DNA of 64,000 bases, from positions 62,001 to 126,000 of IMG/VR virus record IMGVR_UViG_3300020172_001601; one strand, written 5' to 3'. Under the pieces are notes generated by a model. That model did not search any database. It was not told the DNA's origin and worked only from the letters and a program-made list of their open reading frames with translations. Shown here piece by piece: positions 1,074 through 61,836 of this stretch; the first letter of the stretch is position 1, and each line of letters begins with the position of its first letter. Made by a program: the position numbers and the translations under genes.

Positions 1074-1527
1074 TTTCAAGGTATACGGCCATTTGGTTCC
1101 AGTGTTTGCAGGCTTGCTGGATGGTGAGCCTCAGATATTCGGAGTTGTGTGGGAAGATGCCGCTCAGAAAGAGGCGTTTGCCCGTCAGGTTCGTGATTGG
1201 ATCGCCGCAGATCGTCTCAAGGAATATATCATGGTGGTCGAAGCATGGACCGCCAATATTCCAGAGGGCGACCAGTATAAAGTCCGGGATTGGCTCAAAT
1301 CTCACGGAACCCTGCAAAATTGGCCCGACCGCAGCGAAGTGGTCATGGTCCTATATTGTTCGCCAACCGAAGAAATTGAGTATACAGCAGACATTATTCG
1401 TGGTAGAATCCCGGCACCAATGATCGGGGAATGGAAAATCAGCCAGCGTAAAGTGAAGTTCAACCACGAAGACTTCACTACTCGATTTCAAGGTTTGTTC
1501 CTTAAAAGCAAAGCGGGGCAAAACTAA
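1021..1527 (+). CDS. hypothetical protein
   Basis: ORF with RBS, coupled to next gene. Confidence 0.6.
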   Translation: MNVLKESLVVFTEGARVNFKVYGHLVPVFAGLLDGEPQIFGVVWEDAAQKEAFARQVRDWIAADRLKEYIMVVEAWTANIPEGDQYKVRDWLKSHGTLQNWPDRSEVVMVLYCSPTEEIEYTADIIRGRIPAPMIGEWKISQRKVKFNHEDFTTRFQGLFLKSKAGQN

Positions 1528-2639
1528 TGCCATCACAACAAGAAATCGTCGATGCAGTCGCTCGCCAGTTGAAGGGCAAAGACCTCAGCCAGCAAGCAGT
1601 CATGGTTCTTCAGAAGGCTACGGCACGGGTGCTTGAGCGAATCAAGCAGAACGTCGATGCCCAAATCAAAGAAGACTCTTCGCCCATCGTTGAGAAGTTC
1701 GTCAAGAATGCCGCCACGAAAATGTCGGCAATGACCCAGCAATGGGCCGATGGCGTCAAGAATGATCTTGTCGTATTCCCGGAAGGAACTCGATATATTT
1801 GGCGTGATGGTCAAATGACAACCATCATCGTTGAGCAGCAGCCGCAGGTTCGCCATATCAACGTCTATGGCAAGATTTACTTGCTGTCGCTGCCATACGT
1901 CCAGTTCATCATGACGTTCAAGAACCACCAGTTGACACAATCTCTTCGGGTGACTTGCACCAAGAAACCAATCACTGATCTCGATCAGGCGGCGAACTTT
2001 CTCCCATTGGGAAATATCGACGCAAGCCACCAAGTTTGCATGGGTAGTTTCCGGTGGCCGACGACCGGCACTATGACCGATATTGTGAACGCTGTTATTG
2101 GTGAATTCTGGCAAGGCCAGTTCAACTACGATAACGGTGGGAATATGTTGGAATTTTTCACCGAAAACTTCGGCGTTAAGACGCATTCACGAGAAGAAGT
2201 GCATCCTGGTTTTGTGGCTTGGGCGAAGAAGACCCAAGAGAACGCTTTGTATGCTACCGAGCGTACAACCAAGTTGAAGCCCGGTGCTACCTTCCGTCGA
2301 TTCTTGGCGACTGATAGCGGCGACAAGAATGGGTCGCAGTCCATTGTCAATAACCTCAAGCAAGAAATCATCACGGCGGTTGGAGCCATCGGTGGCGATA
2401 TTCAATCCCTGTTGACCGCAGTGGACTTGGCTACTGAAAACCGTGAGAAGGCTCATGTTGAAACTCTCCAAGGCGTTCTGAAGGAAATCATTGTTCAGGC
2501 ATATGCTGAACTGTGGGAATACTTGCAGAAGCAACTTCAGGATGAGCGTGCCAAGCTGCAAAAGGAAATGCAGGAAGCCGCCAACAAGCTGAAGAATGAT
2601 TTCGTGTATTACATGGACCAAAAGAAAAAGGTGTGGTAA
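1527..2639 (+). CDS. prokaryotic E2 (Prok-E2_D/PRTRC-B-like) conjugating-enzyme fold with coiled-coil extensions
   Basis: LPYVQF...LPLGNIDASHQVCMG...EFWQGQFN motif with putative catalytic Cys; operon with JAB, E1, Ubl. Confidence 0.7.
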   Translation: MPSQQEIVDAVARQLKGKDLSQQAVMVLQKATARVLERIKQNVDAQIKEDSSPIVEKFVKNAATKMSAMTQQWADGVKNDLVVFPEGTRYIWRDGQMTTIIVEQQPQVRHINVYGKIYLLSLPYVQFIMTFKNHQLTQSLRVTCTKKPITDLDQAANFLPLGNIDASHQVCMGSFRWPTTGTMTDIVNAVIGEFWQGQFNYDNGGNMLEFFTENFGVKTHSREEVHPGFVAWAKKTQENALYATERTTKLKPGATFRRFLATDSGDKNGSQSIVNNLKQEIITAVGAIGGDIQSLLTAVDLATENREKAHVETLQGVLKEIIVQAYAELWEYLQKQLQDERAKLQKEMQEAANKLKNDFVYYMDQKKKVW

Positions 2640-3679
2640 TGGCCAATATCCAGGATACGATCCGTCGTATTCAGGAGGAAGCGAAACGCACGGTCGAGGC
2701 TGCTCGTTTTAGCAAAAGCAAGCCGCCGATTCCCAAGGTCGCTGTTACTCCTGTCGCAAAGGTTCCCACGACTGATGAAGTCGTGGCGAGCCTTCGTGAG
2801 CAGCTTTCTACGGCTATCGCTCAAGCATTGTCCACCAAGGCTGCACGCCGTTATATTGGCGACGTGACGGAAGAATTACAGGATATTGCTGCCGAAGCTA
2901 TTGAGAGCGCTCGGAACACAACCGACTTTGGTGGTGCTGTTAAGACTGGTGATAAAGTCATCATCTATCCCAACAATTGCAAACTTCTTGTGCAGAACGA
3001 GAATGGTCGTGGGTCTTTCATTATTGAGGAAGCCCCTCAATATCGAACAGTATTGACTCATAGTGGGCGAAAGCCACAGACCTATCGTATTCCCATGCCA
3101 TACATGGTTTACCTGATTGGTTTCCAATACCAAGGTGGTGAATATTACCATGCTGGTTCCGGTATTGGTTTTGGGAAAGAGCCGATTGATTCGATTGACA
3201 CTCGGATGCTTATGCCAAAGTTGCCGCACACCCAGGGCAATATGCACATTTGTCAGCCGATGAATAAAACCAATCACAAGACCGTAAAAGAGTTGGGCGA
3301 ATATGTAGTTCAGACGTTTTGGAGTACCATCTTCCATTACTCGTTTGCACACTCACGTTGCCAATTCAAAGTCGATGGCAAGAGCATCAACAGTTTTGCT
3401 GATTGGGCTAAGATCAAAAATCCTCTTGATATTCTCAAGGGCGATTTTGAGCGGGGACAATCCGTTCAAGAAGTTTTGGGCCACTTTGGTCAAGTACAAG
3501 AGACTCGTGGAACCAATACTGCCAATCACAAGATTCAGTCAGCGGTAACTCGTGTTGTAAACGGTGTCAACAGAAGCCTTTCGGCTGAAGAATTGTCGGA
3601 TGTTATTCGCAGGACGGCAGAAGAAATCGTCAATGTTGCACTTCAAAATGCCATTGGCGATTCTGCTTTACAGCATTGA
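2639..3679 (+). CDS. second prokaryotic E2 family D-like protein
   Basis: MPYMVY...PKLPHTQGNMHICQP...TFWSTIFH parallels preceding ORF. Confidence 0.6.
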   Translation: MANIQDTIRRIQEEAKRTVEAARFSKSKPPIPKVAVTPVAKVPTTDEVVASLREQLSTAIAQALSTKAARRYIGDVTEELQDIAAEAIESARNTTDFGGAVKTGDKVIIYPNNCKLLVQNENGRGSFIIEEAPQYRTVLTHSGRKPQTYRIPMPYMVYLIGFQYQGGEYYHAGSGIGFGKEPIDSIDTRMLMPKLPHTQGNMHICQPMNKTNHKTVKELGEYVVQTFWSTIFHYSFAHSRCQFKVDGKSINSFADWAKIKNPLDILKGDFERGQSVQEVLGHFGQVQETRGTNTANHKIQSAVTRVVNGVNRSLSAEELSDVIRRTAEEIVNVALQNAIGDSALQH

Positions 3680-3754
3680 AAATCAGTGGTATAATCTTCC
3701 CACTCGATACGTTGTCGGTTTCAAGTTCAACAAGTTCTTTCACTGGAGTACCAA

Positions 3755-4678
3755 ATGGCAGACCAACCTCCTGTTCCCCTCGCACTGTTTCCGGTGTATT
3801 TGTTCGATCATGAATTCGAGCCGCCGAAGACGGGAACGTATTATCTCGTCACCAAGACGGGCATCTATCTGCACAAAGAAACCAAGGCGGGCAATGCACT
3901 CGTCAAGGTCGAAGGTATTCCTTGGTTGCAAGAGCCGACCATTGAATTCCGTCTCAAGCTGCCGAAGATTCCGGGGAGCATCATCGGTCAGGCCCTTACC
4001 TTCTTTCGGAAGGTGTTTCAACAGTACAAGTCCGAAGCGTATGTGACGCTTTTGTACAGTGCCAAGTTGAATCAATATCGTCTCTGGTGTCCGGCACAGA
4101 AGGTGTCCGCTGCCAGCGTCAACTACGACCGCACCGACCAGCCTTCGTTCGAGGATCGTCAGTCCAACGATTGGCAGATGTGTGGCACGATTCACTCGCA
4201 CTGTGACTTCAGCGCCTATCACTCCGGCACGGATATTGGCGACGAAGCCAGCTTCGACGGTATCCACATTACCCTGGGCCACGTCAATCGGGCGCAGTTC
4301 AGTATGGAAGCCAGTGTCGCCATCAACGACAAGCGTGAGAAGTTGGAACCAGAAAACTGCTGCTCCGGCGTTATCCGGGTTTCCAACAAGGAAGTTGTTT
4401 CTCGCCCATACATGACCTGGGGTGAAAGTTGCTTCTTCGATCTCGAATTGTCGGAAGAAGACGCACAACAGCTTGTTGCTGATACGGCCATCATCAACGC
4501 CGAGTGGATGCCCAAGGTCGAACACAATGGCTGGCAGGGCAACCAGATGGGCTTCTACGGTGGTGGAGGCAACTGGAAGGGCAAGGGGTCAAAAAAAAAC
4601 GGAAACGATGATCTCTTCGACCAAGGCCCCGATGAAGGTACTGCCGACTGGTGGCGAAATCAGAATTTCATCGACTAA
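3755..4678 (+). CDS. JAB/MPN (Prok-JAB) metalloprotease, deubiquitinase-like
   Basis: SEA upstream Glu and GTIHSHCDFSAYHSGTDIGDE (HSH..S..D) JAMM motif. Confidence 0.9.
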   Translation: MADQPPVPLALFPVYLFDHEFEPPKTGTYYLVTKTGIYLHKETKAGNALVKVEGIPWLQEPTIEFRLKLPKIPGSIIGQALTFFRKVFQQYKSEAYVTLLYSAKLNQYRLWCPAQKVSAASVNYDRTDQPSFEDRQSNDWQMCGTIHSHCDFSAYHSGTDIGDEASFDGIHITLGHVNRAQFSMEASVAINDKREKLEPENCCSGVIRVSNKEVVSRPYMTWGESCFFDLELSEEDAQQLVADTAIINAEWMPKVEHNGWQGNQMGFYGGGGNWKGKGSKKNGNDDLFDQGPDEGTADWWRNQNFID

Positions 4679-4767
4679 TTGAACCTGATCGTCTTGAACC
4701 TGATCGCCCTTTGGCTCTCTAGGTGTTTAGCAAAAACTCAATCTCCAATAACGAAGGGAATAGCCTC

Positions 4768-5538
4768 ATGGCAACAAAGAAGGCGGCGAAGGACGAATCA
4801 CCCGTCGCCAAGAAGCCGCTCAAGATTAAGGTGATTGGAACGGGCGGCATCGGCCTTTGCCTGCTTCCTTCGCTCTGTCGATACCTCAACTATAACGGCG
4901 AGAAATATCCCGCCGTGGAAGTGAGCCTGATCGACGGCGATACGTTCGAGGAACGCAATCGTGAGCGACAGGACTTTGTTGAGACGGGGCCGAAGGCGTC
5001 CATGACCGCTGCCGAATATCGGGGCAAATTCCCACGACTGATGTTTTGGGACCATCCGGTATACGTCGCCGATCACAACGTCATTCAGTTGATTCGGGAG
5101 AACGATATTGTTCTTCTCTGTGTGGATAATCACAAGACCCGCAAGCTGATTAGCGACCGGGCCGAAGAACTGAAGAATGTTACCGTCATCAGTGGCGGCA
5201 ACGATTGGACTGATGGAAACGTGTTGCTTCATATTCGACGGGATGAGAAGAACCTGACGCCACCTTTGGCGAGCAAGTTTCACCCGGAGATTTTGAATCC
5301 GACCGACGAGAACCCTGCCGACGTGGAACAGAAGGCAGAAGGTTGTGCAGAGTTGGCTGTTGCTGCACCGCAACTGCTGATTACGAACAACTACATTGCC
5401 GCCAACATGCTGGCGGGACTGTACAACGTGATTGACGAAGGGCGATACGAGAAGGTTCTCGCCGCTCCGCACAATTTCGCAGAGGTCTACTGTGATCTCT
5501 CCGTGATGAAGTCCATCCCACGAGAACGCAAGGTGTAA
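4768..5538 (+). CDS. ThiF/E1-like ubiquitin-activating enzyme
   Basis: VIGTGGIG, IDGDTFEERNRERQ, CVDN, GGND, putative catalytic GCAE, PQLLITN. Confidence 0.9.
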   Translation: MATKKAAKDESPVAKKPLKIKVIGTGGIGLCLLPSLCRYLNYNGEKYPAVEVSLIDGDTFEERNRERQDFVETGPKASMTAAEYRGKFPRLMFWDHPVYVADHNVIQLIRENDIVLLCVDNHKTRKLISDRAEELKNVTVISGGNDWTDGNVLLHIRRDEKNLTPPLASKFHPEILNPTDENPADVEQKAEGCAELAVAAPQLLITNNYIAANMLAGLYNVIDEGRYEKVLAAPHNFAEVYCDLSVMKSIPRERKV

Positions 5539-7821: not shown

Positions 7822-8067
7822 GCGATTTGGTGATGTGGATATGTATCGGCACGATGCTGATCGTACTCACTGAGATTTTTGGTCCGCTTTATGTAAAGTA
7901 TTTCTGGCATGATCCAGAACGCCGCCTCAAAGAAATTGAGCGGCAAAATGCTTTGCTTGACAGAATCGAAAACTTCTGATATTCTCTGAGCAGTGAAATA
8001 AACCGGGGCAGCGATGCCCTGGTTCTTTTGAAAAACAAAAAGAAAGTCGCCAGAAACCCAAATCGAC

Positions 8068-8194
8068 TTTACAAGCCTTGAAGACCGTGGTAGAATGATT
8101 GCACAACGCTGATGAAACCGACGACGGAATCAAAAAAGAAAAGTTGTCGGAAACCTGAAGTGGACTTTACAAGGATGGAAAGCTGTGGTAGAAT
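8068..8194 (+). promoter_or_regulatory. tandem sigma70-type promoters upstream of ncRNA/tRNA array
   Basis: TTTACA-N17-TAGAAT at 8068-8096 and 8166-8194 within an imperfect ~98-bp duplication. Confidence 0.75.
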
Positions 8195-8324
8195 GATGAC
8201 ACAACGGAAATGATCCAGCAACCTTGCAGCGATGGTTGATGGGTAACAAGGGTGTGTGAGGGAGGCGCTGTGACCTCCGCACTTAATGTAAACCTGTAAA
8301 ATGGTTTCGCCCTTAAAACGATAT

Positions 8325-8415
8325 GGCGAGGTAGCTCAGTCTGTTAGAGCATTGTGAATAGGGGCCGAAAGGTCTACTAACGCAAGGGTCGGTGGTTAAA
8401 ATCCATCCCTCGCCA
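8325..8415 (+). ncRNA. tRNA-like RNA with extended GAAA-capped hairpin in place of anticodon loop
   Basis: Acceptor GGCGAGG/CCTCGCC, D arm, T arm (GGTTAAAATCC); no 7-nt anticodon loop. Confidence 0.7.
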
Positions 8416-8418
8416 CTT

Positions 8419-8487
8419 TGTAAGTCAAATGCCGTCAGGACTACATTTGCAAAACGTAACGTCTTGGCAACCATTTGTTGACTTACA
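8419..8487 (+). ncRNA. Y-RNA-like small RNA
   Basis: Terminal stem TGTAAGTC/GACTTACA, 5' GTCAAATGC, GGACTACATT, 3' ATTTGTTGAC. Confidence 0.6.
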
Positions 8488-8492
8488 TTTAT

Positions 8493-8617
8493 GGACTGTT
8501 AGCTCAGTGGCCTGTTTACAGGGAAGCCGGTTGTATTAGCCGAGAAATCGGATGATACAAACACTTCAGAGCGTCGTAGCAATACGAAGGTCGATGGTTC
8601 GATTCCATCACGGTCCA
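8493..8617 (+). ncRNA. tRNA-like RNA, GCAA tetraloop instead of anticodon, D-loop insertion
   Basis: GGACTGT/ACGGTCC acceptor; TCGTA-GCAA-TACGA; GATGG-TTCGATT-CCATC. Confidence 0.75.
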
Positions 8618-8621
8618 CTAT

Positions 8622-8799
8622 GGGGAAGTAGTAGAATCCAACTCAGAGCAGTTGGAGTGGAAAAGCAGTTTAGGCTCACGGAGCAATCCGCATGTTGATG
8701 GGGAAACCCATAAACATGAACCAAGAGGGGCGACCCTCGAACAACTGCCGAGAATACCGGGGTAACTCGGTGATGCTGGTTCGAGTCCAGCCTTCCCCA
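8622..8799 (+). ncRNA. tRNA-like RNA, GTAA tetraloop, ~110-nt multi-hairpin D-loop insertion
   Basis: GGGGAAG/CTTCCCC; CCGGG-GTAA-CTCGG; GCTGG-TTCGAGT-CCAGC. Confidence 0.75.
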
Positions 8800-8803
8800 C
8801 TAC

Positions 8804-8914
8804 GCAGCGGTAGCTCAAATAGAACCGTTTTACAGGTAGTGGCAACATTACTTGCATTTGGTAGAGCCTTCCGTAAGGAAGAGGTTGAAGGTGAGAGTCC
8901 TTCCCGCTGCACCA
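8804..8914 (+). ncRNA. tRNA-like RNA, GTAA tetraloop, D-loop insertion, encoded CCA
   Basis: GCAGCGG/CCGCTGC-ACCA; CTTCC-GTAA-GGAAG; T arm GAAGG-TGAGAGT-CCTTC. Confidence 0.75.
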
Positions 8915-8915
8915 T

Positions 8916-9047
8916 GCTGGGGTAGTAGAATTGGAATGTATGACTAGGAAGCGACATGAGGTTGTAATGACCTTTAATTCGCCCCCATGACCATACAGAG
9001 AACGCTACAGTAATGTGGAAATGCAGGTTCGAGTCCTGCCCCCGGCA
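8916..9047 (+). ncRNA. tRNA-like RNA, GTAA tetraloop, D-loop insertion
   Basis: GCTGGGG/CCCCGGC; CTACA-GTAA-TGTGG; GCAGG-TTCGAGT-CCTGC. Confidence 0.75.
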
Positions 9048-9077
9048 CTTAACATTCAACACACAGGAGATTGCACG

Positions 9078-9548
9078 ATGGCATCAATTTCGCTTGCGAA
9101 GGCCCTGAAGCTGAAGAACCGTCTGGCTGGTCGTCTGAACAAAGTTCAGAATGATATTGTGACGTACAACTCAGTCCTGACCGAACAAGCGGGCAAAGTT
9201 GATGTTCCCGCTCTGTGCAAACTGCGTGATGAGATCGCCGACAACCTCATCGCATTGAAGACGAAGATCATCGTCTCCAATGCTGAGATTCAGGGCGACC
9301 TGATTCGTCAGGGAGAATTGAAGTCCAAGTTGACGTGGCTTGCCACGCTCGACACCCGTGACGGCAAGGAACGTCATGGCTACCAAAACACCGAAGTAAC
9401 CTGGACGGCCACGCTCAAGAAGAAAGACGTGGACGACGAAACCAGGAAGCTGGAAACCGAGATCGACGCCATCCAGGATAAGCTGGACAGCTTCAACCAC
9501 ACGAAGAAAGTGGAAGTTGCTGATCGTTCGCTCGAACTCGCCAGCTAA
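9078..9548 (+). CDS. DIP1984-like coiled-coil protein
   Basis: ISLAKALKLKNRL...LETEIDAIQDKLDSFNHT pattern; strong RBS (CAGGAG). Confidence 0.6.
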   Translation: MASISLAKALKLKNRLAGRLNKVQNDIVTYNSVLTEQAGKVDVPALCKLRDEIADNLIALKTKIIVSNAEIQGDLIRQGELKSKLTWLATLDTRDGKERHGYQNTEVTWTATLKKKDVDDETRKLETEIDAIQDKLDSFNHTKKVEVADRSLELAS

Positions 9549-10967: not shown

Positions 10968-11045
10968 CTTTACAAGTCGAAAGACTTGTGGTAGAATCTT
11001 GAAGTTCGATAAACAAACACACGGCTCGTTGCCGTGTCAGGAGAC

Positions 11046-11439: not shown

Positions 11440-11512
11440 GGCTCCGACACCTTTAGTGGATGAGGCCCCGCCTTTTAAGCGGGTCAAGAGGGATCGTTAC
11501 CCTACGGAGCCA
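11440..11512 (+). tRNA. tRNA-Lys(TTT), atypical T loop
   Basis: CCCGC-CTTTTAA-GCGGG; T loop ATCGTTA. Confidence 0.7.
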
Positions 11513-11517
11513 CTTCT

Positions 11518-11602
11518 GCGCTCGACGCTGAATTGGTTGCAGCACCAGACTTTTAATCTGGTTTCCGCAAGGGACGTGTGGGTTCGAGTCCCACCGGGCG
11601 CA
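11518..11602 (+). tRNA. tRNA-Lys(TTT) with long variable arm
   Basis: CCAGA-CTTTTAA-TCTGG; V arm TTCC-GCAA-GGGA. Confidence 0.8.
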
Positions 11603-11627
11603 CTGTAACGAAATGAATGAACACTGA

Positions 11628-12057: not shown

Positions 12058-12147
12058 TGTGAGATACGCTAGTTGGTAAGCGGCGAAGCTGTTAACTTCG
12101 TGCAATCCGTCTTGAACGGTACGCAGGTTCGACCCCTGCTCTCACAG
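12058..12147 (+). tRNA. tRNA-Asn(GTT) with long variable arm
   Basis: CGAAG-CTGTTAA-CTTCG; ~22-nt variable region. Confidence 0.75.
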
Positions 12148-12153
12148 CTTTCT

Positions 12154-12945: not shown

Positions 12946-13192
12946 GAGAGTGTAGTGTGAATAGCCGCAGAGGTAAATTCACAAAAGTTGAAGGAAGTGC
13001 AAAGCTAAAACTGCAAGTAACAGTTGCAAAAGCTATAAAAACCGTGAGCGGCTGTAAGGGCCGACAGGCTTGGAGAAAATAACTTTGCATAGAGATCAAT
13101 GAGTAGTGTTTCGAGATAAGCGGTAGGCAGCACAGAGGCTATAGCATTTGCAACCGGAGCCTCCAGTTTAGGTTCGAGTCCTAACGCTCTCA
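12946..13192 (+). ncRNA. 247-nt tRNA-like RNA with very large D-loop insertion
   Basis: GAGAGTG/CGCTCTC acceptor; TTAGG-TTCGAGT-CCTAA; GAGGCT/AGCCTC stem with oversized loop. Confidence 0.65.
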
Positions 13193-13661: not shown

Positions 13662-13738
13662 GAGGTTGTGTTCGTCTAGTGGTCTAGGATGCCGTCGTTG
13701 AAGACGGCGACATGGGTTCAAATCCCATACACAATCTC
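13662..13738 (+). ncRNA. Glu-like tRNA body with 6-nt anticodon loop
   Basis: CCGTC-GTTGAA-GACGG; extended acceptor GAGGTTGTGT/ACACAATCTC. Confidence 0.65.
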
Positions 13739-13835: not shown

Positions 13836-13906
13836 GATTCGGGTTAGTGTAACGGTAGCACGGAGCCGTCAAAGGCTCCAGAGTGGTTCGACTCCACACC
13901 CTTATC
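13836..13906 (+). ncRNA. tRNA-like RNA, short anticodon loop (TAGTGTAACGGTAGCACG family)
   Basis: GGAGCC-GTCAAA-GGCTCC; T arm present. Confidence 0.6.
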
Positions 13907-13913
13907 ACAATAT

Positions 13914-13983
13914 GTTCTGTCCTGCGGATTCAGGCATTGAGTCTACGAAACTCGACTGGAAGGTTCGACTCCTTCACGGAACA
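13914..13983 (+). tRNA. tRNA-Arg(ACG), compact non-canonical fold
   Basis: TTGAGT-CTACGAA-ACTCGA. Confidence 0.75.
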
Positions 13984-14406: not shown

Positions 14407-15154
14407 ATGGTGCGTCTTTGGCTCGAAACTGTGCGGATTTAGACCAACAGGTAGGTTACACCTGGGGCATTACTTCTCGGTGATTCAACCGGGACAAGCT
14501 GGGTGTACCGTACTGGTGGCAAACTATCATGCACCGGAGGTAAAGAATCTGGAAGTATCCGTGAACGCCTTACGGCAATACGGTGTCCAGACCATAGTGA
14601 TTCAGAAGGACGTGTTTGACGCTGAGTTGTTCTTCCGACTATTGACGCTCGCTAAAATGGGCGACTTGAGCCGGATGACACAATTCAAGTCAACAGAAGA
14701 GGACGATAGGACTGGCCAATTGTTGACCTACCCTGTTCTCATGGCGCATGATGTTGCGGGTTACTCCGAAGTCATTGTGGGCCTGGATCAGAAGCAGCAT
14801 TTGGAATATGCCAGAAAGCTGTTGAGAAAATACAACAGTGTATATGGCACGACATATCCAATCCCGATAGCGAATATCGTGGTGGGACGTGTCAAAGATT
14901 TGCGTGACCCGACGAAGAAAATGTCGAAGTCATCACCACAAGGATGTTTATTCCTTGATGATAAGGTTGATGATATTCAACAAAAGATTCGGAAAGCGAC
15001 CGCAGATGAAGAGGGCCTGAATAACTTGAAGTTTTTGTATGGGGAGTTTGTAAGAGAAACGCCTCCAACAAGTAATCAAGAACTAAAAGAAAAGCTGGCC
15101 GATGGTTTGGTGAAATGCTTTGCAAGCTGTAGTGGCACAGCATCCGGCTCTTAA
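14407..15154 (+). CDS. trpS: tryptophanyl-tRNA synthetase (compact), requiring +1 frameshift at 14416-14421
   Basis: GFRPTGRLHLGHY, YPVLMAHD, VGLDQKQHLE, KMSKS; the SD-associated ATG (14407) is out of frame with the catalytic ORF. Confidence 0.85.
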
Positions 15155-15189
15155 CCGGAAGGTTCAGGGTTCAAGTCCCTGGCGAAGCA
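15117..15189 (+). tRNA. tRNA-Lys(CTT), overlaps trpS 3' end
   Basis: TCCGG-CTCTTAA-CCGGA. Confidence 0.8.
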
Positions 15190-15194
15190 CTCTT

Positions 15195-15276
15195 GCAGGT
15201 ATGGCAGAACGGTTATGCACCTGACTCTTAATCAGGGATCGCAAGATCAACGTAGGTTCGACTCCTACTGCCTGCA
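15195..15276 (+). tRNA. tRNA-Lys(CTT) with long variable arm
   Basis: CCTGA-CTCTTAA-TCAGG; V arm GATC-GCAA-GATC. Confidence 0.85.
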
Positions 15277-15284
15277 CTATTTAC

Positions 15285-17758: not shown

Positions 17759-17898
17759 GCGTCTTTAGTGTAACTGTTAGAGCCGACCGACCTGAAAGGC
17801 CACCGGGCAACCGAGTTCTTCAGGCACGACAAGCGATAACGGCTGAAGCACGTCGCCTCTGGAGGGCAAGAGACTAGGTGCGAATCCTAGAGGACGCT
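17759..17898 (+). ncRNA. tRNA-like RNA with ~65-nt D-loop insertion and abnormal anticodon arm
   Basis: GCGTCTT/AGGACGC; TAGTGTAAC...AGCACG; CTAGG-TGCGAAT-CCTAG. Confidence 0.65.
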
Positions 17899-17998: not shown

Positions 17999-18123
17999 GC
18001 CGGGTTAGCTCAATGGTAGAGCGCCAAAAACTACTCTCAGCAATATTTGGGCTTCGGCCATGCTCGTTGGGAATACATTCCACTCGGAGGAGGAGGTCGT
18101 TGGTCCGATTCCAACACCCGGCA
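17999..18123 (+). ncRNA. tRNA/Y-RNA chimera
   Basis: tRNA acceptor, D and T arms with anticodon arm replaced by GCAATATTTGGGC-TTCG-GCCATGC...GGGAATACATT. Confidence 0.7.
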
Positions 18124-19366: not shown

Positions 19367-19369
19367 CTT

Positions 19370-19500
19370 TTGTGACAAATGCTCGTTTGGGATTACATTT
19401 GGTTCGACTCCAAGGGGCGGCTCTTTCAAAAACATGCCGCCCAACCAGCACAGGGCAACCTGGGGCTGGGGTCCGATCTCAGCACAATTTGTTGTCACAA
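19370..19500 (+). ncRNA. Y-RNA-like RNA with T-loop
   Basis: TTGTGACAAATGC...GGGATTACATT-TGGTTCGACTCCA...GCACAATTTGTTGTCACAA. Confidence 0.65.
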
Positions 19501-19524
19501 AATACACTTAAAAGAAAGATTGCT

Positions 19525-20313: not shown

Positions 20314-20316
20314 CTT

Positions 20317-20415
20317 GGTTCAAATGCAGGCAGGATTACATTTATCGGGCGATGAGCCGAAAGGGTCGCTGGTTCGATTCCAGCCCCAGCAGCTTAGATA
20401 GATTATGTTGAAACC
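20317..20415 (+). ncRNA. Y-RNA-like RNA with T arm
   Basis: GGTTCAAATGC..GGATTACATT...GCTGG-TTCGATT-CCAGC...TGTTGAAACC. Confidence 0.55.
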
Positions 20416-20986
20416 CACACGTTTAATTTGGCAAGACTTGGTTAGTCGGATTGTTCAATTGGGACATGATCGAGATCAAGTTGTGCATGGCTCAATGCCT
20501 GAAAGTACACTGGCTCTTTTGTCAAATGTATTGACAGGGAATGGTTTGCAAATTGGTGGATTTGTTGGCGTGTCTCATTGTTATTTGGCGTGGGCCTTGC
20601 GAGACAAAGGCTCGATATGCACTGTGGACCCCAATTTGAAACATCGTGGTATTGAAAATCCTTTCTTGGTTGCGACCAGGATGGTTTCTGAGTTTGGATT
20701 ATTGAAAAACTCAATGCTGATATGTGGATATGGCCTAAAACAAATGCGGTTGTTTGCGATCTTGGGAGTGAAATTTGATTTCATCATTTTGGATGGCAAT
20801 CATGATTTTCAGATGGTGAATGATGAGATCGAGTGCGCCACACCGATATTGAAAGACGGTGGATATTTGGTCTTGGATGACATCGACCATTGGGACGGTC
20901 CAAAAAAGGTTTACAACAGCGGTCCAGCAGGGTATAATCGGATCGAACTGGATTCGAGGGCTGGACTTTTGCAGAAAATGGGGTAA
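20405..20986 (+). CDS. class I SAM-dependent methyltransferase (Methyltransf_24-like)
   Basis: FDFIILDGNHD...LKDGGYLVLDD. Confidence 0.8.
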   Translation: MLKPTRLIWQDLVSRIVQLGHDRDQVVHGSMPESTLALLSNVLTGNGLQIGGFVGVSHCYLAWALRDKGSICTVDPNLKHRGIENPFLVATRMVSEFGLLKNSMLICGYGLKQMRLFAILGVKFDFIILDGNHDFQMVNDEIECATPILKDGGYLVLDDIDHWDGPKKVYNSGPAGYNRIELDSRAGLLQKMG

Positions 20987-26624: not shown

Positions 26625-26693
26625 GTCTCGGCCTGCGGATCAGGCGTTGGGCCTCCGAAGCCCGAATGAAAGGTTCGACTCCTTTCCGGGATA
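26625..26693 (+). tRNA. tRNA-Arg(CCG), compact non-canonical fold
   Basis: TTGGGC-CTCCGAA-GCCCGA. Confidence 0.75.
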
Positions 26694-26696
26694 CTT

Positions 26697-26765
26697 GCCC
26701 CTGGTGATGGACACAGCAGATCGTTCTAAGGTCAGCGTTGAGGGTTCGATTCCTTCCGGGGGCGC
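26697..26765 (+). tRNA. tRNA-Arg(TCT), reduced D arm
   Basis: GATC-GTTCTAA-GGTC; T arm intact. Confidence 0.55.
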
Positions 26766-39018: not shown

Positions 39019-39121
39019 GGTCGGGTAACTCAGCGGCAGAGTCATCAGTGAATCCGGGTGGTTTTATAGTTGCCATTGCGGAAAGCTGATGAGGTCGCAG
39101 GTTCGAGTCCTGCCCCGGCCA
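39019..39121 (+). ncRNA. tRNA-like RNA with extended hairpin in anticodon arm
   Basis: GGTCGGG/CCCGGCC; CATCAGT..GCTGATG enclosing ~33-nt insert. Confidence 0.7.
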
Positions 39122-39140: not shown

Positions 39141-39232
39141 GGGGGTGAACCCAAATGGTTGCGGGAACCGCCTTATAAGCGGCTTACAGTCAGATAAACT
39201 GAGTATACAAGGTTCGATTCCTTGCACCCCTA
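39141..39232 (+). tRNA. tRNA with TAT anticodon (Ile) and long variable arm
   Basis: CCGC-CTTATAA-GCGG; ~24-nt variable region. Confidence 0.75.
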
Positions 39233-39528
39233 CTCAAAGTTGCAATGGGCAAGAACAACAAATACCATAAATTCCCTCCCCGCAAGCAGGTTCCTGTCGG
39301 CGGGGTTTGTCTTTTGTGTCAATGCAATAGACAAGTGCGAATGGCAGCACGACCCTTCGTTAAGGGCAAGTCGATTTCTCATGCCCTTGGTTTTCCGGCT
39401 GCGATGCCTTTGCTTTCTCCCGGAATGATATTCAAAGGCGTCAATAACTTGACAGGTGAAGAAGAATCATTCAAAGTACAATGTGTATTGATTTTGAATC
39501 CAGAACGTAGTTCAGTAGAAAGAATAAA

Positions 39529-40437
39529 ATGAACATCACACGCATTGCTCCGTCGCCGACCGGCGATATGCACATTGGCACTGCCAGAACCGCATATTTC
39601 AACTGGCTCGCAGCACGGGCCAGCGGTGGTAAGTTCATTCTTCGGGTGGACGACACCGATCAGAAGCGAAACGATCCAGCCTATACAGAAGTCATTCTGT
39701 CCACAATGAAGTGGCTAGGTTTGGACTACGATGAGATCGTCTTCCAGAGTTCCAGATTCGACGTATACAAGGCCGCAGCGGGCTTGTTGATCCATGAAGG
39801 CTGGGCCGTTCCAAAAGATGGAGCCACGGTTTTTAACTTGAAGAAGGACCATGTTTTTCCTTCTCATTGGAAGGACGAAATCAAGGGCGACATCAAGATC
39901 AGCGATGATGACATATCCCATATGGATGGGATGGTTCTCATTAAGTCTGATGGGAGTCCATCTTATAACTTTTGTTCGATTGTTGATGATTTGCACATGG
40001 GGGTCAACCTAATCATCCGTGGAGTGGATCATATAACAAACACAGCAAAGCAGGTGATGCTTTGGGATGTCCTCAATAGCGGACAGACGATACCAAGGTT
40101 TGCCCACCTGGGTCTTATTTGCATTGATGGAAAGCCTATGTCCAAAAGAGACGGGGCATCGAGCATGTTGAATTACATGAACGCCGGATATGATTCCGAC
40201 GCCATGTTGAATTTTCTTGCACGCCTTGGTTGGGGGCCAACAAAGGACGACAAGTCCACAACCCTATTGCCGAGAGACAAGATGCTTGAAATGTTTCTAA
40301 CTTCGGGTAAGATGAGGAGTCAGCCAGCTAGTTTCGATTCTGGCAAATTGGAGTCGTTCGACCGCAAGTACAAGGCCCGTAAGGGGACTTGGCGAACGGG
40401 CGACAAGTTGATTTCTGACACTAACAAAGAGGCATAG
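39529..40437 (+). CDS. glutamyl-tRNA synthetase family protein lacking anticodon-binding domain
   Basis: RIAPSPTGDMHIG, LRVDDTD, IIRGVDH, KPMSKRDG; only 302 aa. Confidence 0.85.
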   Translation: MNITRIAPSPTGDMHIGTARTAYFNWLAARASGGKFILRVDDTDQKRNDPAYTEVILSTMKWLGLDYDEIVFQSSRFDVYKAAAGLLIHEGWAVPKDGATVFNLKKDHVFPSHWKDEIKGDIKISDDDISHMDGMVLIKSDGSPSYNFCSIVDDLHMGVNLIIRGVDHITNTAKQVMLWDVLNSGQTIPRFAHLGLICIDGKPMSKRDGASSMLNYMNAGYDSDAMLNFLARLGWGPTKDDKSTTLLPRDKMLEMFLTSGKMRSQPASFDSGKLESFDRKYKARKGTWRTGDKLISDTNKEA

Positions 40438-42034: not shown

Positions 42035-42370
42035 CATGCCAAGGGCGTCTTGGATTCATCGTGTTGATGCCCGCCGATTTCATTCGGCGGCAAGAATGAT
42101 GGAAGACGATTTGGAAGGTGCCTACTTGACCTGTAGGGAAAAGTACGGTGCAGAAGTGGCTGGAGTAGTGTTGGTCACAATACTCCGACAAAAATTGAAC
42201 AACAATCAAGACCAATGGCCTCCACCGGAAGACCTTATTCGCAAGGTGAACAACTTTCTCGTGGAACACGGCTTAATGATTGATTGAATTTGTTGACTGG
42301 ATGTGGGGTGCGAACCTCACCATGACATAGTGTGTCTGGTCAAATAACTCGAAAGGCAATGGTGATTACG

Positions 42371-44077
42371 ATGGCTAACAAGAATCTATTCAAGTCTGAG
42401 CGTGGCTCAATTGTTCCAGCAACGGACGTTCTCAACGAAGCTGGTGGTGTTGCATACAAGATGAGTGCAAAGCAGGCCCTTGCGCAGTACGTCTGCACTG
42501 GCTGCTTGAACGGCACCTACTACACGTCTGCCAAGACGCAACTGGACACTGTTCGTCAGTTGCTTACTGAAGTCGAGCCTGAGTTCCTTGGTCAGTTGGC
42601 TGTGTACTCGCACGAAAAGTCCTTCATGAAGGACTTGCCTGCTCTGTTGGTCGCATTCCTCGCATCCGACAAGGGTGCTGGTGGTGGTCCAACTACGGCT
42701 ACGCAGGAGCGAAAGCTGAAGACGCTCCGTAAGGTTTTCCATCGTGTCATCGACAGCGGCAACATGCTGCGCAACTTTGTGCAGATGATCCGTTCGGCAG
42801 CATTCGGTCGCAAGTCATTCGGTGAAGTGCCTCGCAAGCTGATTCGTGACTGGTTCGAGAATAAGTCTCCGGCTGGTATTTTCTTCCAGAGCATTGGCAA
42901 TAGCCCATCCCTGGCAGATATTATCAAGCTGACCAAGCCGAAGCCGAACACGCCTGAAAAGGCGGCTGTATTGGCGTATCTGCTTGGTGCAGAAACCGTT
43001 GACGGCGAAGATGGCAAGTTGCTTGTTCGCAAGTATCTTGACCGTGCCGACAAGCAGGTGAAGGTTGCGTACTCGCAGCCTTACGACAACCTGCCGGAAA
43101 TCATTCGTGAATACGAAGCGTGGAAGAAGGACAAGAGCCTCCCGGTTCCTGCCATCAACTTCCGCTTCCTGGACAACGAGAAGCTGTCAACTGCTCAGTG
43201 GGCAGATATTGCTTCCAAGGCAAACTGGCTTACGACCCTGAAGAACCTCAACGCATATGCCGACCACGGCGTATTCGGCGTTGAAGGCATGACTGACATG
43301 ATCGCCGCACGTCTCAGCAATGCTGATGAAGTGCGTAAGGTTCGGGTATTCCCATACCAGATCATGATGGCCTACCTCGCAACCGATACGGAAGCGAAAG
43401 TACCGCCCAAGGTCCGTAACGCCATTCAGGATGCTATGGAAGTGGCATGTGAAAACGTACCAGCGTTGGGAAAGGTTAAGTTCTTCCCGGACGTGTCTGG
43501 TTCGATGAGGAGCGCTGCTATTACGGGCGACCGTGGTTCGGCGACTTCTAAGGTTCGGTGTGTTGACGTGGCTGCTCTGTTCGCAGTGGCAATGCTTCGT
43601 CGCAACCCGGAAGCGGAAGTAATTCCGTTCGAGCAGACGGTTCGTGAACTTACACTGAACCCTCGTGACAGCATCATGACCAACGCTACTCGCCTCGCAG
43701 CGATTGGCGGTGGTGGAACCAACTGTTCGGCCCCACTTGCTTTGCTCAACGCAAAGAAGGATTGGTCGGCAGACGTGTTGGTGTATATTTCGGACTATGA
43801 GTCCTGGGTGGATAGCACTGGCTACCACGCTGGTAATGGCAACGGTACAGCACTGCTCAATGAGTGGGTGAAGTACAAGAGCCATAACAAGAATGCCAAG
43901 CTGATTTGCATCGACTTGACCCCTCGTGCAAACCATCAGGTCAAGGAACGTGATGATATTCTCCAGGTCGGTGGATTCTCGGACAACGTATTCAACGTGA
44001 TCGCAAGGTTCGTTGAAGGCGGCTGGTCGAAGGATTTTTGGGTCAAGGAGATTGAAAGCGTTCAACTGGATACTTAA
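42371..44077 (+). CDS. rsr: Ro60/TROVE domain RNA-binding protein with vWA domain
   Basis: NEAGGVAY, TGCLNGTYY, LKNL, VFPYQ, MIDAS DVSGSM, GGGTNCSAPL, ISDYESW. Confidence 0.9.
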   Translation: MANKNLFKSERGSIVPATDVLNEAGGVAYKMSAKQALAQYVCTGCLNGTYYTSAKTQLDTVRQLLTEVEPEFLGQLAVYSHEKSFMKDLPALLVAFLASDKGAGGGPTTATQERKLKTLRKVFHRVIDSGNMLRNFVQMIRSAAFGRKSFGEVPRKLIRDWFENKSPAGIFFQSIGNSPSLADIIKLTKPKPNTPEKAAVLAYLLGAETVDGEDGKLLVRKYLDRADKQVKVAYSQPYDNLPEIIREYEAWKKDKSLPVPAINFRFLDNEKLSTAQWADIASKANWLTTLKNLNAYADHGVFGVEGMTDMIAARLSNADEVRKVRVFPYQIMMAYLATDTEAKVPPKVRNAIQDAMEVACENVPALGKVKFFPDVSGSMRSAAITGDRGSATSKVRCVDVAALFAVAMLRRNPEAEVIPFEQTVRELTLNPRDSIMTNATRLAAIGGGGTNCSAPLALLNAKKDWSADVLVYISDYESWVDSTGYHAGNGNGTALLNEWVKYKSHNKNAKLICIDLTPRANHQVKERDDILQVGGFSDNVFNVIARFVEGGWSKDFWVKEIESVQLDT

Positions 44078-44132: not shown

Positions 44133-44255
44133 TTGGCGGTAGCTCAATGGTAGAGCAAAAGTAAAAACAAATCTAAGCGATATTTGGGCTTCGGCCATGC
44201 AGTTTGGATTACATTATCCAACTTTAGGTTGTGTGTTCGATTCACACCCCGCCAG
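44133..44255 (+). ncRNA. tRNA/Y-RNA chimera directly downstream of Ro60
   Basis: D arm TAGCTCAATGGTAGAGC, T arm GTGTG-TTCGATT-CACAC, insert GCGATATTTGGGC-TTCG-GCCATGC..GGATTACATT as in 17999. Confidence 0.75.
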
Positions 44256-61760: not shown

Positions 61761-61836
61761 GGGTTGAACGGTGAGTCCAATCGGTAAGGCGCAAGTCGCT
61801 CCGATGTAACTGAGGGTTCGATTCCCTCCAACTCCA
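61760..61836 (+). ncRNA. Ala-type tRNA-like domain without D stem or anticodon (mini tmRNA-like)
   Basis: GGGGTTG/CAACTCC-A (G3:U70), GAGGG-TTCGATT-CCCTC, ATCGG/CCGAT stem capped by GCAA hairpin. Confidence 0.65.

What the first reader, a model, noticed from the sequence alone, without database searches (positions are those of the whole stretch)
8325..9047. Cluster of anticodon-less tRNA mimics: GNRA tetraloop replaces the anticodon, with large D-loop insertions
Seen: four consecutive RNAs (8493, 8622, 8804, 8916) keep a 7-bp acceptor stem and T arm, but the anticodon stem is capped by GCAA or GTAA and the D loop holds 35-110 nt of unrelated hairpins. A fifth (8325) has an extended GAAA-capped arm. 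Acceptor sequences all differ yet pair, which argues for selection rather than decay. They lie first behind tandem strong promoters. Inference: they cannot decode and cannot be cut at an anticodon. They may be decoys or inhibitors of host tRNA-targeting nucleases/toxins or uncharged-tRNA sensors, or tRNA-scaffolded carriers for functional RNA inserts.
Basis: partly seen in the sequence, partly recalled or inferred. Interest (0 to 1): 0.85.

Follow-up and report, generated by a model that had tools for sequence, protein, structure and literature searches.

The report
Anticodon-less tRNA-shaped RNAs in huge phage
A 340-kb phage carries, behind strong promoters, five conserved tRNA-shaped RNAs that have no anticodon loop, next to a Y-RNA-like hairpin and in a genome that encodes a Ro60 protein, so tRNA bodies seem to be reused here as carriers for other RNA modules.

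Summary
Window 8325-9047 contains five tandem tRNA-like genes (E1-E5). Each has a 7-bp acceptor stem, U8-A9, a T arm and A73, and four carry the same N73-CU trailer as the window's ~50 real tRNAs (E4 has ACCA). None has a 7-nt anticodon loop.

Orthologous arrays occur in at least 10 related metagenomic phage contigs. All helices covary, including the closed anticodon-position helix and the insert helices. The cap is not specifically GNRA, because orthologs use CUUG, UCAC or larger loops. The inserts are conserved modules rather than unrelated hairpins.

New context:
- The 77-nt spacer between E1 and E2 is a conserved Y-RNA-like hairpin.
- The phage encodes a Ro60/Rsr ortholog.
- A YrlA-like RNA lies at 19368-19500.
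- Two further tRNA-like RNAs, one directly after the Ro60 gene, carry a circularly permuted copy of that hairpin in place of the anticodon arm.

The best reading is that E1-E5 are non-decoding, tRNA-derived stable RNAs matured by tRNA-processing enzymes, whose tRNA core carries functional inserts. A role as decoys for anticodon nucleases is unsupported. The closest precedents are T4 RNA C (function still unknown) and bacterial YrlA. I rate it a new variant of a known kind.

The parts
8068..8194 (+). Tandem sigma-70-like promoters (TTTACAAG-N11-GTGGTAGAAT) at 8068-8096 and 8166-8194.
   Evidence: One search gives 10 of 12 consensus matches with a TG extension for each. The same motif recurs at 10969. 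It is conserved upstream of the arrays in relatives.
8204..8324 (+). Conserved leader RNA between the promoter and E1. Function unknown.
   Evidence: 88% identical over 113 nt in L132, whose neighbouring protein is only 58% identical. The alignment shows compensatory changes in the first hairpin.
8325..8415 (+). E1: tRNA-like RNA with a normal D arm, a variant T loop (UUAAAAU), and an anticodon stem extended into a GAAA-capped arm.
   Evidence: Rfam tRNA 49.5 bits. Fold. Six orthologs give 28 pairs, 9 with compensatory change.
8416..8492 (+). H: Y-RNA-like (YrlB-like) hairpin with invariant CAAAUGC, GGAYUACAU and UAUUUGUUG.
   Evidence: Best Rfam family is YrlB, but weakly (19.6 bits, E 0.73; 15 bits in L132). 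Seven homologs give 19 pairs, 11 compensatory, 96.9% paired against 25-50% when partners are slid.
8493..8617 (+). E2: tRNA-like RNA. Its D stem encloses a two-hairpin insert placed after G18G19. The anticodon-position helix is capped by GCAA.
   Evidence: 40 pairs, 19 with changes on both sides, 93.7% paired against 37-43% when slid. All 5 anticodon-helix pairs covary.
8622..8799 (+). E3: tRNA-like RNA with a ~125-nt multi-hairpin D-region domain and a GUAA-capped helix before the T arm.
   Evidence: three orthologs, 49 pairs, 12 compensatory. E3 is absent from L052 and L056.
8804..8911 (+). E4: tRNA-like RNA. Its D stem encloses one CC...GG hairpin. It has a GUAA-capped anticodon helix and a variant T loop (UGNGAGU).
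   Evidence: 30 pairs, 10 compensatory, 95.6% paired against 39-54% when slid.
8916..9047 (+). E5: tRNA-like RNA with a ~70-nt D-region domain and a GUAA-capped helix.
   Evidence: Rfam tRNA 31.9 bits. Five orthologs give 23 pairs, 7 compensatory.
9078..9548 (+). Downstream gene for a 156-aa helical protein, weakly DUF6847-like. It served as the synteny anchor. Its role is unknown.
   Evidence: 219 homologs. The AlphaFold model has pLDDT 94.6. The only structural match is the uncharacterised 3kdq.
17999..18123 (+). X4: tRNA-like RNA with normal acceptor, D and T arms. Its anticodon arm is replaced by a permuted H module (UAUUUGG-GCUUCGGC-CAUGC plus a GGAAUACAU hairpin).
19368..19500 (+). Y2: YrlA-like Y RNA. 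It has an 11-bp terminal stem, a CAAAUGC / AAUUUGUUG internal loop, a T arm, a closed 7-bp acceptor-like hairpin and a D-like hairpin.
   Evidence: Motif hit (0 expected by chance). Fold. Full-length but weak Rfam YrlA match at 19372-19501 (16.6 bits, E 2.6).
42332..44077 (+). Ro60/Rsr ortholog (TROVE plus vWA_Ro60 domains).
   Evidence: Pfam. About 50% identical to bacterial proteins named 60 kDa SS-A/Ro or TROVE domain-containing. Phage orthologs lie on contigs whose lengths (and, for two, record names) match those that hold L053, L189 and L194.
44134..44255 (+). R1: tRNA-like RNA starting 57 nt after the Ro60 stop codon, on the same strand. Its anticodon arm is replaced by the permuted H module.
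   Evidence: (conserved after the Ro60 gene in L198, with a perfect 7-bp acceptor there).

Best explanation
E1-E5 are tRNA-derived stable RNAs that do not decode.

Shown:
- They keep the acceptor and T-arm half of a tRNA.
- In E1, E2 and E4 they also keep the D stem. E2 keeps a canonical G18G19 / T-loop elbow as well.
- The anticodon loop is closed off by a short capped helix.
- Extra helices sit in the D region (E2-E5) or on the anticodon arm (E1).
- All of these helices are maintained by compensatory change across related phages.

Inferred:
- They are transcribed from the tandem promoters as one precursor with the leader RNA and the Y-like hairpin H.
- They are cut out by RNase P and the tRNA 3'-end machinery. 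Four carry the same N73-CU trailer as the phage's real tRNAs, and all are separated by tRNA-style spacers.
- They accumulate as L-shaped RNAs. The tRNA core supplies processing, stability and a handle for tRNA-binding proteins.
- The conserved inserts are the working parts, and they bind partners that are still unknown.
- The array belongs to a larger phage programme built on Ro60 and Y-like RNAs. In that programme the same tRNA core demonstrably carries a Y-RNA module (X4 and R1).
For: tRNA-like core and chance control.

Orthologous arrays sit upstream of the same gene in L052-L056, L187-L189, L193, L194, L196, L132 and L059.

Covariation, with slid-partner controls: E2, E4, E1 (79), E3 (80), E5 (78).

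The cap sequence is free: GCAA, GUAA, GAAA, CUUG, UCAC, a 3-nt loop or a 10-nt loop.

The inserts are conserved:
- E2 hairpin 1 (CCUGUUUACAGG) is identical in 5 of 6 orthologs.
- E2 hairpin 2 covaries at 11 of 15 pairs.
- E3 and E5 share the modules YUAGGCUCAC-CGG-GNRA-CCG and GAACCAA-GAGGG-GNRA-CCCUC-GAA.

Precedent for a tRNA core used as carrier in the same genome: X4 and R1 carry the permuted H module, and R1 lies directly 3' of the Ro60 gene and is conserved in L198.

H lies exactly between E1's 3' end and E2's 5' end.

Relatives interleave other structured RNAs, including an SRP-RNA-like element, between the same tRNA-like units.
Against: - There is no expression, processing or binding data. 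The phage is uncultivated.
- No partner has been identified for any E1-E5 insert.
- E1-E5 lack the CAAAUGC / GGAYUACAU / UAUUUG module, so the link to Ro60 rests on neighbourhood and analogy only.
- The most invariant parts are the elbow and T arm, which fits a pure mimic or decoy model equally well.
- E4's insert is only a single hairpin.
- E3 is dispensable in the closest relative, L052.
Confidence: 0.5

Rival explanations
1. tRNA mimic or decoy. In this reading the conserved acceptor, T-arm and elbow half is itself the active part. It would titrate or recruit proteins that recognise tRNA independently of the anticodon. Candidates are RNase P, the CCA-adding enzyme, EF-Tu, peptidyl-tRNA hydrolase, Ro60-associated exonucleases, and host toxins that modify or cut the acceptor end.
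For: The T arm, U8-A9, A73 and (in E2) G18G19 are the most conserved positions. The RNAs are placed first behind strong promoters. The phage carries many translation-related genes, including RRF, PTH2, an L7/L12-like protein and several aaRS.
Against: It does not explain why long inserts are kept by compensatory change, or why five different versions are maintained. Anticodon nucleases such as PrrC, RloC, VapC and PARIS need the anticodon loop that is missing here (own knowledge). No candidate target was identified.
Confidence: 0.22
2. Anticodon-independent amino-acid carriers. After CCA addition the RNAs would be charged by a synthetase that ignores the anticodon. Candidates are the phage LeuRS-like enzyme, or the synthetase paralogs that lack an anticodon-binding domain. 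The charged RNAs would donate the amino acid outside normal decoding.
For: A73 is present in all five elements and in almost all orthologs. The window encodes a 224-aa TrpRS/TyrRS-type core (14480-15154), a 302-aa GluRS/GlnRS catalytic core (39529-40437) and a LeuRS-like enzyme (46672-49233). The TrpRS/TyrRS-type core recurs near the array in L194-L196.
Against: No G3:U70, no G-1 and no long variable arm. CCA is not encoded, except for ACCA in some E4 copies. The co-occurrence is only genomic. The known GluRS-core paralog, GluQ-RS, targets an anticodon base (own knowledge).
Confidence: 0.1
3. Processing punctuation or decaying tRNA genes. The elements would serve only as RNase P and 3'-end cleavage signals that release neighbouring RNAs (the leader, H, and the SRP-like RNA in relatives). 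Alternatively they are tRNA pseudogenes.
For: H is flanked exactly by E1 and E2. In relatives other structured RNAs lie between the tRNA-like units. Array content varies by whole units.
Against: E2, E3, E4 and E5 abut each other with 4-nt spacers and no cargo between them. Inserts and capped helices covary, and invariant insert motifs persist down to 51-67% identity of the neighbouring protein.
Confidence: 0.1
4. Intron-containing tRNAs that regain an anticodon loop after splicing.
For: ARAGORN in intron mode calls E1 as tRNA-Ser(ACU) with a 17-nt intron and E3 as tRNA-Val(AAC) with an 86-nt intron. The sequence ACUAA is conserved in five E1 orthologs.
Against: Rfam reported only tRNA at gathering threshold across the window and no intron family in the lax scan of 7900-9200. 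The inserts are far too short for group I introns. The E1 junctions do not form a bulge-helix-bulge. Two E1 orthologs would have A33. A class I body with A73 is not a tRNA-Ser. E2, E4 and E5 have only 4-nt caps, so no excision could create an anticodon loop.
Confidence: 0.03

Closest known systems
Bacteriophage T4 RNA C (species 1 RNA, rnaC) and RNA D
   Same: Stable RNA genes at the end of a phage tRNA cluster. RNA C (139 nt) folds with an acceptor-like terminal stem, a canonical T arm (CCGGG-UUCGAAU-CCCGG), a closed hairpin in the anticodon position with no anticodon loop, and a large D-region hairpin. Its function is still unknown (PMC3014915, PMC9697503, PMC12685909).
   Different: There is no detectable sequence similarity: blastn of 8000-9100 against 50,697 phage records found nothing. 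The T4 acceptor stem has two U-U mismatches. T4 has a single RNA C rather than an array of five. T4 has no Ro60 or Y RNA context.
Bacterial and mycobacteriophage Y RNAs with a tRNA-like domain (YrlA, Rfam RF02553; YrlB, RF02565)
   Same: These are non-decoding RNAs that mimic the tRNA T arm, D arm and acceptor stem. They are linked to Ro60/Rsr, and M. smegmatis YrlA is cut by RNase P and receives CCA (PMC4201824). This phage has Ro60, a YrlB-like hairpin inside the array and a YrlA-like RNA at 19368-19500.
   Different: In YrlA the RNA ends lie in the Ro60-binding stem and the acceptor stem is closed by a loop. E1-E5 have the normal tRNA topology, with an open acceptor and a closed anticodon helix. 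They lack the Ro60-type motif and lie 33 kb from the Ro60 gene.
mascRNA / MEN-beta tRNA-like RNAs and engineered tRNA scaffolds (own knowledge; PMC11693755 for mascRNA)
   Same: A tRNA-shaped body without a functional anticodon loop. It is released by RNase P and RNase Z and receives CCA. In engineered scaffolds the body is used to stabilise foreign RNA inserts.
   Different: These are eukaryotic or artificial. In engineered scaffolds the insert replaces the anticodon loop, whereas here it is mostly in the D region. They are analogues, not relatives.
tmRNA tRNA-like domain
   Same: An acceptor stem and T arm are retained, and the anticodon arm is replaced by other structure.
   Different: ARAGORN finds no tmRNA in the window. 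There is no tag reading frame, no pseudoknot series and no G3:U70.

Membership tests
Decoding tRNA (Rfam RF00005) | 7-bp acceptor stem, U8, T arm with a 7-nt loop, discriminator base. | tested here: met
   Rfam scores: E1 49.5 bits and E5 31.9 bits. Orthologs: L187 E2 40.4, L193 E2b 49.0, L059c 41.8.
Decoding tRNA (Rfam RF00005) | 5-bp anticodon stem closed by a 7-nt loop with U33 and a purine at position 37. | tested here: not met
   E2-E5 have 4-nt caps and E1 has a 24-nt extended arm. ARAGORN in default mode calls none of them.
Decoding tRNA (Rfam RF00005) | Compact D arm (4-bp stem, 7-11-nt loop) with G18G19. | tested here: inconclusive
   E1 has a normal arm but no GG. In E2 and E4 the D stem encloses a 38-55-nt insert. 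E2 keeps GG. E3 and E5 have no convincing D stem.
Y RNA (YrlA / YrlB) | Ro60-binding stem with a conserved 5'-strand motif (GNCGAAN0-1G type). | tested here: not met
   The phage version of the motif (AAAUGC-N4-8-GGAYUACAU) occurs at 8427, 19377 and 20322, and in none of E1-E5. Rfam lists no YrlA or YrlB hit on E1-E5 at E<=10. The neighbouring hairpin H does carry the motif.
Y RNA (YrlA / YrlB) | Encoded within a few kb of rsr on the same strand. | tested here: not met
   The Ro60 gene is at 42332-44077, 33 kb downstream of the array. R1, not E1-E5, occupies the position next to rsr.
Y RNA (YrlA / YrlB) | Physical binding to Ro60. | not testable with these tools
   Needs co-immunoprecipitation.
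T4 RNA C-like stable RNAs of phage tRNA operons (no formal family) | Located in a tRNA gene cluster, with an acceptor-like stem plus T arm, no anticodon loop and an enlarged D region. | tested here: met
   Architecture compared. Homology is not shown, since there is no sequence match.
tmRNA | tRNA-like domain plus a tag-peptide reading frame. | tested here: not met
   ARAGORN reports no tmRNA. Only 10-bit fragments match tmRNA models.
tRNA interrupted by a group I or bulge-helix-bulge intron | A recognisable intron core or BHB at the junctions, with an anticodon loop restored on excision. | tested here: not met
   Only tRNA was reported at gathering threshold across the window, and the lax scan of 7900-9200 lists no intron family. 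E2, E4 and E5 cannot regain a loop. The ARAGORN intron-mode calls for E1 and E3 give non-canonical tRNAs.

The most novel reading that the evidence does not exclude
The phage runs a second, anticodon-independent tRNA world. In this reading a set of tRNA-bodied RNAs (E1-E5, X1, X3, X4, X8, R1) would work with Ro60 and Y RNAs, and possibly with synthetase paralogs that lack anticodon-binding domains. They would act as specificity or adaptor subunits, for example to direct RNA decay or repair enzymes to host tRNAs or rRNAs, or to carry amino acids for non-ribosomal transfer. Each insert would define a different partner.
Probability: 0.12. Interest if true: 0.9.

Novelty: new variant of a known kind. 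Interest (0 to 1): 0.7.

Why it matters
Phage tRNA clusters have been known since the 1970s to hold tRNA-like stable RNAs, such as T4 RNA C and D, whose function is still unknown. This clade offers what T4 never did:
- many diverged orthologs with clear covariation;
- five paralogous designs side by side;
- a genomic link to Ro60 and Y RNAs, in which the same tRNA body visibly carries a recognisable module.

That makes the question of what anticodon-less tRNA bodies are for experimentally approachable, through Ro60 pull-downs, RNase P and CCA assays, and charging assays. It also extends phage-encoded Y RNAs beyond mycobacteriophages. Finally, it shows that tRNA finders and annotation pipelines silently skip a whole class of phage RNAs.

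Tried and rejected
- **GenBank phage search.** blastn (region) and megablast (first 25 kb) against GenBank phages found no relative. Only generic tRNA matches appeared.
- **Single-protein locus searches in IMG/VR.** These returned only the source contig.
- **Promoter-motif scan of IMG/VR.** It gave 49 stretches (45 outside the source contig) that share at most one weakly similar protein with the window (5 loci), so it is a generic sigma-70-like consensus and not a clade marker.
- **Type-A signature pattern scan.** I wrote the first gap too narrow (maximum 50, while E2 needs 55). It found nothing in IMG/VR and one false positive in genomes, an ordinary tRNA-Arg. This negative result says little.
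- **MAFFT alignment of E2-type and E4-type elements together.** It misaligned the D 3' strand and the capped helix. I analysed the ortholog groups separately instead.
- **Downstream protein.** The model is confident, but its only structural match is an uncharacterised protein, so it gives no functional hint.
- **Rfam around the Ro60 gene.** Nothing was found at E<=5. R1 was found by motif instead.
- **YrlA hit in L132.** Rejected as an artefact of two adjacent tRNA-like units.
- **Literature searches.** Searches for anticodon-less or insert-bearing phage tRNA-like RNAs found no description.
Full report
**What the window is**

The window is part of IMGVR_UViG_3300020172_001601, a 340-kb phage contig. 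It has no close relative among 50,697 GenBank phage records. From about 10.8 to 39 kb it carries about 50 tRNA genes. It also encodes many translation-related proteins:
- RRF, PTH2 and an L7/L12-like protein;
- MetRS and a LeuRS-like enzyme;
- a GluRS/GlnRS catalytic core without an anticodon-binding domain;
- a 224-aa TrpRS/TyrRS-type core.

**Observation**

| Element | Coordinates | Length (nt) |
|---|---|---|
| E1 | 8325-8415 | 91 |
| E2 | 8493-8617 | 125 |
| E3 | 8622-8799 | 178 |
| E4 | 8804-8911 | 108 |
| E5 | 8916-9047 | 132 |

Each has a perfect 7-bp acceptor stem, U8-A9, a 5-bp T stem with a 7-nt loop, and A73. Four have the N73-CU trailer seen on nearly all real tRNAs of the window; E4 has ACCA. 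E2 to E5 are separated by 4 nt.

Minimum-free-energy folds put a 5-bp helix capped by GCAA or GUAA where the anticodon arm should be in E2-E5. In E1 they put a GAAA-capped extension on the anticodon stem. Rfam's tRNA model scores E1 at 49.5 bits and E5 at 31.9 bits. ARAGORN calls none of them.

The strict architecture never appears in 300 dinucleotide shuffles of the region, nor in 17.7 kb of coding control on either strand. Two extended -10 promoters lie at 8068-8096 and 8166-8194.

**Relatives and selection**

The protein encoded just downstream (9078-9548) has 219 homologs in metagenomes. Fetching their contigs gave syntenic arrays in L052/L056, L053, L054, L055, L187/L188, L189, L193, L194, L196, L132 and L059. 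These span 97% down to 51% identity of that protein. Arrays differ by whole units. For example, E3 is absent from L052, and extra RNAs are inserted in L052, L053 and L187.

Ortholog alignments give these consensus structures:

| Element | Predicted pairs | Pairs with compensatory change |
|---|---|---|
| E1 | 28 | 9 |
| E2 | 40 | 18-19 |
| E3 | 49 | 12 |
| E4 | 30 | 10 |
| E5 | 23 | 7 |

With every 3' partner slid by 1-3 columns, paired cells fall from 94-96% to 37-54%. Compensatory pairs fall from 19 to 2-5 for E2 and from 10 to 0-2 for E4. RNAalifold places the D stem around the insert in E2 and E4.

**They do not decode**

No ortholog has a 7-nt anticodon loop. In the E2 family the helix covaries at all five pairs. 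The caps are GCAA, GUAA, GAAA, CUUG, UCAC, a 3-nt loop, or a 10-nt loop with an internal GNRA. So the end is simply closed. GNRA is common but not required.

ARAGORN in intron mode proposes E1 as tRNA-Ser(ACU) with a 17-nt intron and E3 as tRNA-Val(AAC) with an 86-nt intron. I reject this for four reasons:
- Only tRNA is reported at gathering threshold across the window, and the lax scan of 7900-9200 lists no intron family.
- The junctions are not bulge-helix-bulge.
- Two E1 orthologs would have A33.
- E2, E4 and E5 cannot regain a loop at all.

**The inserts are not unrelated**

- In E2 the first insert hairpin (CCUGUUUACAGG, directly after G18G19) is identical in five of six orthologs. The second covaries at 11 of 15 pairs.
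- E4 has one hairpin in the same place with the same CC...GG closing pairs.
- The three elements of the distant locus L059 repeat this plan, with UUCG, GUAA or UUGC caps on long anticodon arms.
- E3 and E5 share a GUAGUAGAAU start and two modules: YUAGGCUCAC-CGG-GNRA-CCG and GAACCAA-GAGGG-GNRA-CCCUC-GAA.

**A wider family and the Ro60 link**

My scan found more long tRNA-like genes inside the tRNA region:

| Element | Coordinates | Length (nt) |
|---|---|---|
| X1 | 12946-13192 | 247 |
| X3 | 17759-17898 | 140 |
| X4 | 17999-18123 | 125 |
| X8 | 39019-39121 | 103 |

The 77 nt between E1 and E2 (H, 8416-8492) is a hairpin conserved in seven loci. It has invariant CAAAUGC, GGAYUACAU and UAUUUGUUG, and 11 of its 19 pairs show compensatory change. 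Its best Rfam family is YrlB, a Y RNA, but weakly (E 0.73; E 4.4 for the L132 copy).

The window encodes a Ro60/Rsr ortholog at 42332-44077. It is about 50% identical to bacterial TROVE/Ro proteins. Phage orthologs of it lie on contigs whose lengths, and for two of them record names, match those that hold L053, L189 and L194.

The motif AAAUGC-N4-8-GGAYUACAU occurs three times in the window against 0 expected. The copy at 19377 lies in a 133-nt RNA (19368-19500) that folds like YrlA. It has a terminal stem with the motif in an internal loop, a T arm, a closed 7-bp acceptor-like hairpin and a D-like hairpin. Rfam gives a full-length but weak YrlA match at 19372-19501.

X4, and an element starting 57 nt after the Ro60 stop (R1, 44134-44255), are ordinary-topology tRNA bodies. 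Their anticodon arm is replaced by a circular permutation of H (UAUUUGG - GCUUCGGC cap - CAUGC - GGAWUACAU strand). R1 is conserved after the Ro60 gene in L198.

So this phage demonstrably mounts a Y-RNA-type module on tRNA cores. That the module binds Ro60 is an inference from the YrlA/YrlB resemblance and gene adjacency.

**Other cargo in relatives**

Between the same tRNA-like units, relatives carry:
- an SRP-RNA-like element (L187:4321-4409, 31.4 bits, below the gathering score of 40, E 1.7e-4; also in L054, L132 and L059);
- two unknown structured RNAs.

W, L052 and L132 share a ~115-nt leader RNA.

**Mechanism**

The core facts are shown: conserved, structured, tRNA-bodied and non-decoding. 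I infer the following, at about 0.5 confidence:
- The array is a stable-RNA operon matured by RNase P and the tRNA 3'-end and CCA machinery.
- The tRNA body provides processing, stability and a protein handle.
- The inserts are the specific functional parts.

The main rival, at about 0.2, is that the tRNA half itself is the active mimic or decoy. Charging by anticodon-independent synthetases, pure punctuation, and introns are less likely. A role against anticodon nucleases has no support, because the recognised loop is absent.

**Known relatives**

T4 RNA C shows the same architecture. Its function is still unknown according to PMC3014915, PMC9697503 and PMC12685909. No sequence similarity was detected.

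Bacterial and mycobacteriophage YrlA RNAs mimic tRNA and bind Ro60 (PMC4201824), but they have the permuted topology. mascRNA and engineered tRNA scaffolds are functional analogues (own knowledge).

Literature searches found no description of anticodon-less, insert-bearing tRNA bodies in phage arrays.

**Verdict**

This is a real and conserved feature. It is a new variant of a known kind. Its interest is raised by the Ro60 and Y-RNA context.

Noticed in passing
window 8416-8492: The spacer between E1 and E2 is a conserved Y-RNA-like hairpin with invariant CAAAUGC, GGAYUACAU and UAUUUGUUG. It is Rfam's best but weak match to YrlB. L132 has two copies.
   Followed up: yes
window 42332-44077 and 44134-44255: A Ro60/Rsr ortholog, followed 57 nt later by a tRNA-like RNA (R1) whose anticodon arm is a permuted copy of the Y-like module. 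R1 is conserved in L198 but absent after the Ro60 gene in L199 and L200.
   Followed up: yes
window 19368-19500 and about 20314-20440: Two YrlA-like RNAs, each directly after a tRNA gene. The second is tentative, and its 3' strand would overlap the annotated start of the ORF at 20405.
   Followed up: partly
window 12946-13192; also L052:9672-9918, L194:9649-9921, L195:9507-9762: A 247-273-nt RNA with a 7-bp acceptor stem and a canonical T arm (UUAGG-UUCGAGU-CCUAA), conserved across distant relatives. Its interior is uncharacterised.
   Followed up: no
window 17759-17898 and 39019-39121: Two more long tRNA-like genes. X3 is 140 nt. X8 is 103 nt and has an extended anticodon arm like E1.
   Followed up: no
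window 11440-11603 and 15117-15277: Each tRNA-Lys isoacceptor (UUU and CUU) comes as a pair: a normal copy followed 4 nt later by a copy with a long GCAA-capped variable arm. L187 and L194 also hold long (82-84 nt) tRNA-Lys copies. tRNA-Lys is the target of several anticodon nucleases (own knowledge), so a shape variant could be an escape form.
   Followed up: no
window 12058-12148 and 39141-39233: tRNA-Asn(GUU) and tRNA-Ile(UAU) have long variable arms, which is unusual for these identities.
   Followed up: no
window 13664-13738, 13836-13908, 13914-13983, 26625-26693, 26697-26764, 61760-61836: tRNA-like genes with 6-nt anticodon loops, or with compact odd D regions. ARAGORN mislabels or misses them.
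   Followed up: no
L187:4321-4409 (also L054:~5330-5370, L132:5905-5967, L059:~1495-1530): An SRP-RNA-like element with the GGUCAGGCCGGAAGG domain IV motif inside the relatives' arrays. It scores below Rfam's gathering score (31.4 against 40 bits). None was found in the window.
   Followed up: partly
L052:5338-5520, L053:4717-4930, L187:4430-4637; L054:5573-5687, L187:4753-4868: Two further conserved, strongly folding RNAs of unknown family, interleaved with the tRNA-like units in relatives.
   Followed up: no
window 8204-8324: A leader RNA that is 88% identical in L132 although the flanking protein is only 58% identical. It has compensatory changes in its first hairpin.
   Followed up: partly
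window 14480-15154 and 39529-40437: Class I synthetase paralogs reduced to the catalytic core: a TrpRS/TyrRS type of 224 aa and a GluRS/GlnRS type of 302 aa. In L199 the GluRS-type gene is called as two pieces.
   Followed up: no
window 1527-5538: Upstream genes resemble a prokaryotic ubiquitin-like conjugation set: weak Prok-E2 and JAB matches and a ThiF/E1 match above Pfam's cut-off. They are syntenic in relatives.
   Followed up: no
L053:5596-6000: After E5 this relative has tandem heptamer runs (CATTCAA and CACACT types) flanking a partial duplicate of the 3' half of E5.
   Followed up: no
L096:4641-4943, L103:5292-5433: Marine phage contigs hold 142-152-nt tRNA-like genes with encoded CCA, a T arm and long interiors, upstream of a distant homolog of the same protein.
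   Followed up: no
window, all tRNA genes: Almost every tRNA and tRNA-like gene ends N73-C-U instead of CCA. This implies a shared 3'-processing signal and dependence on a CCA-adding enzyme.
   Followed up: partly
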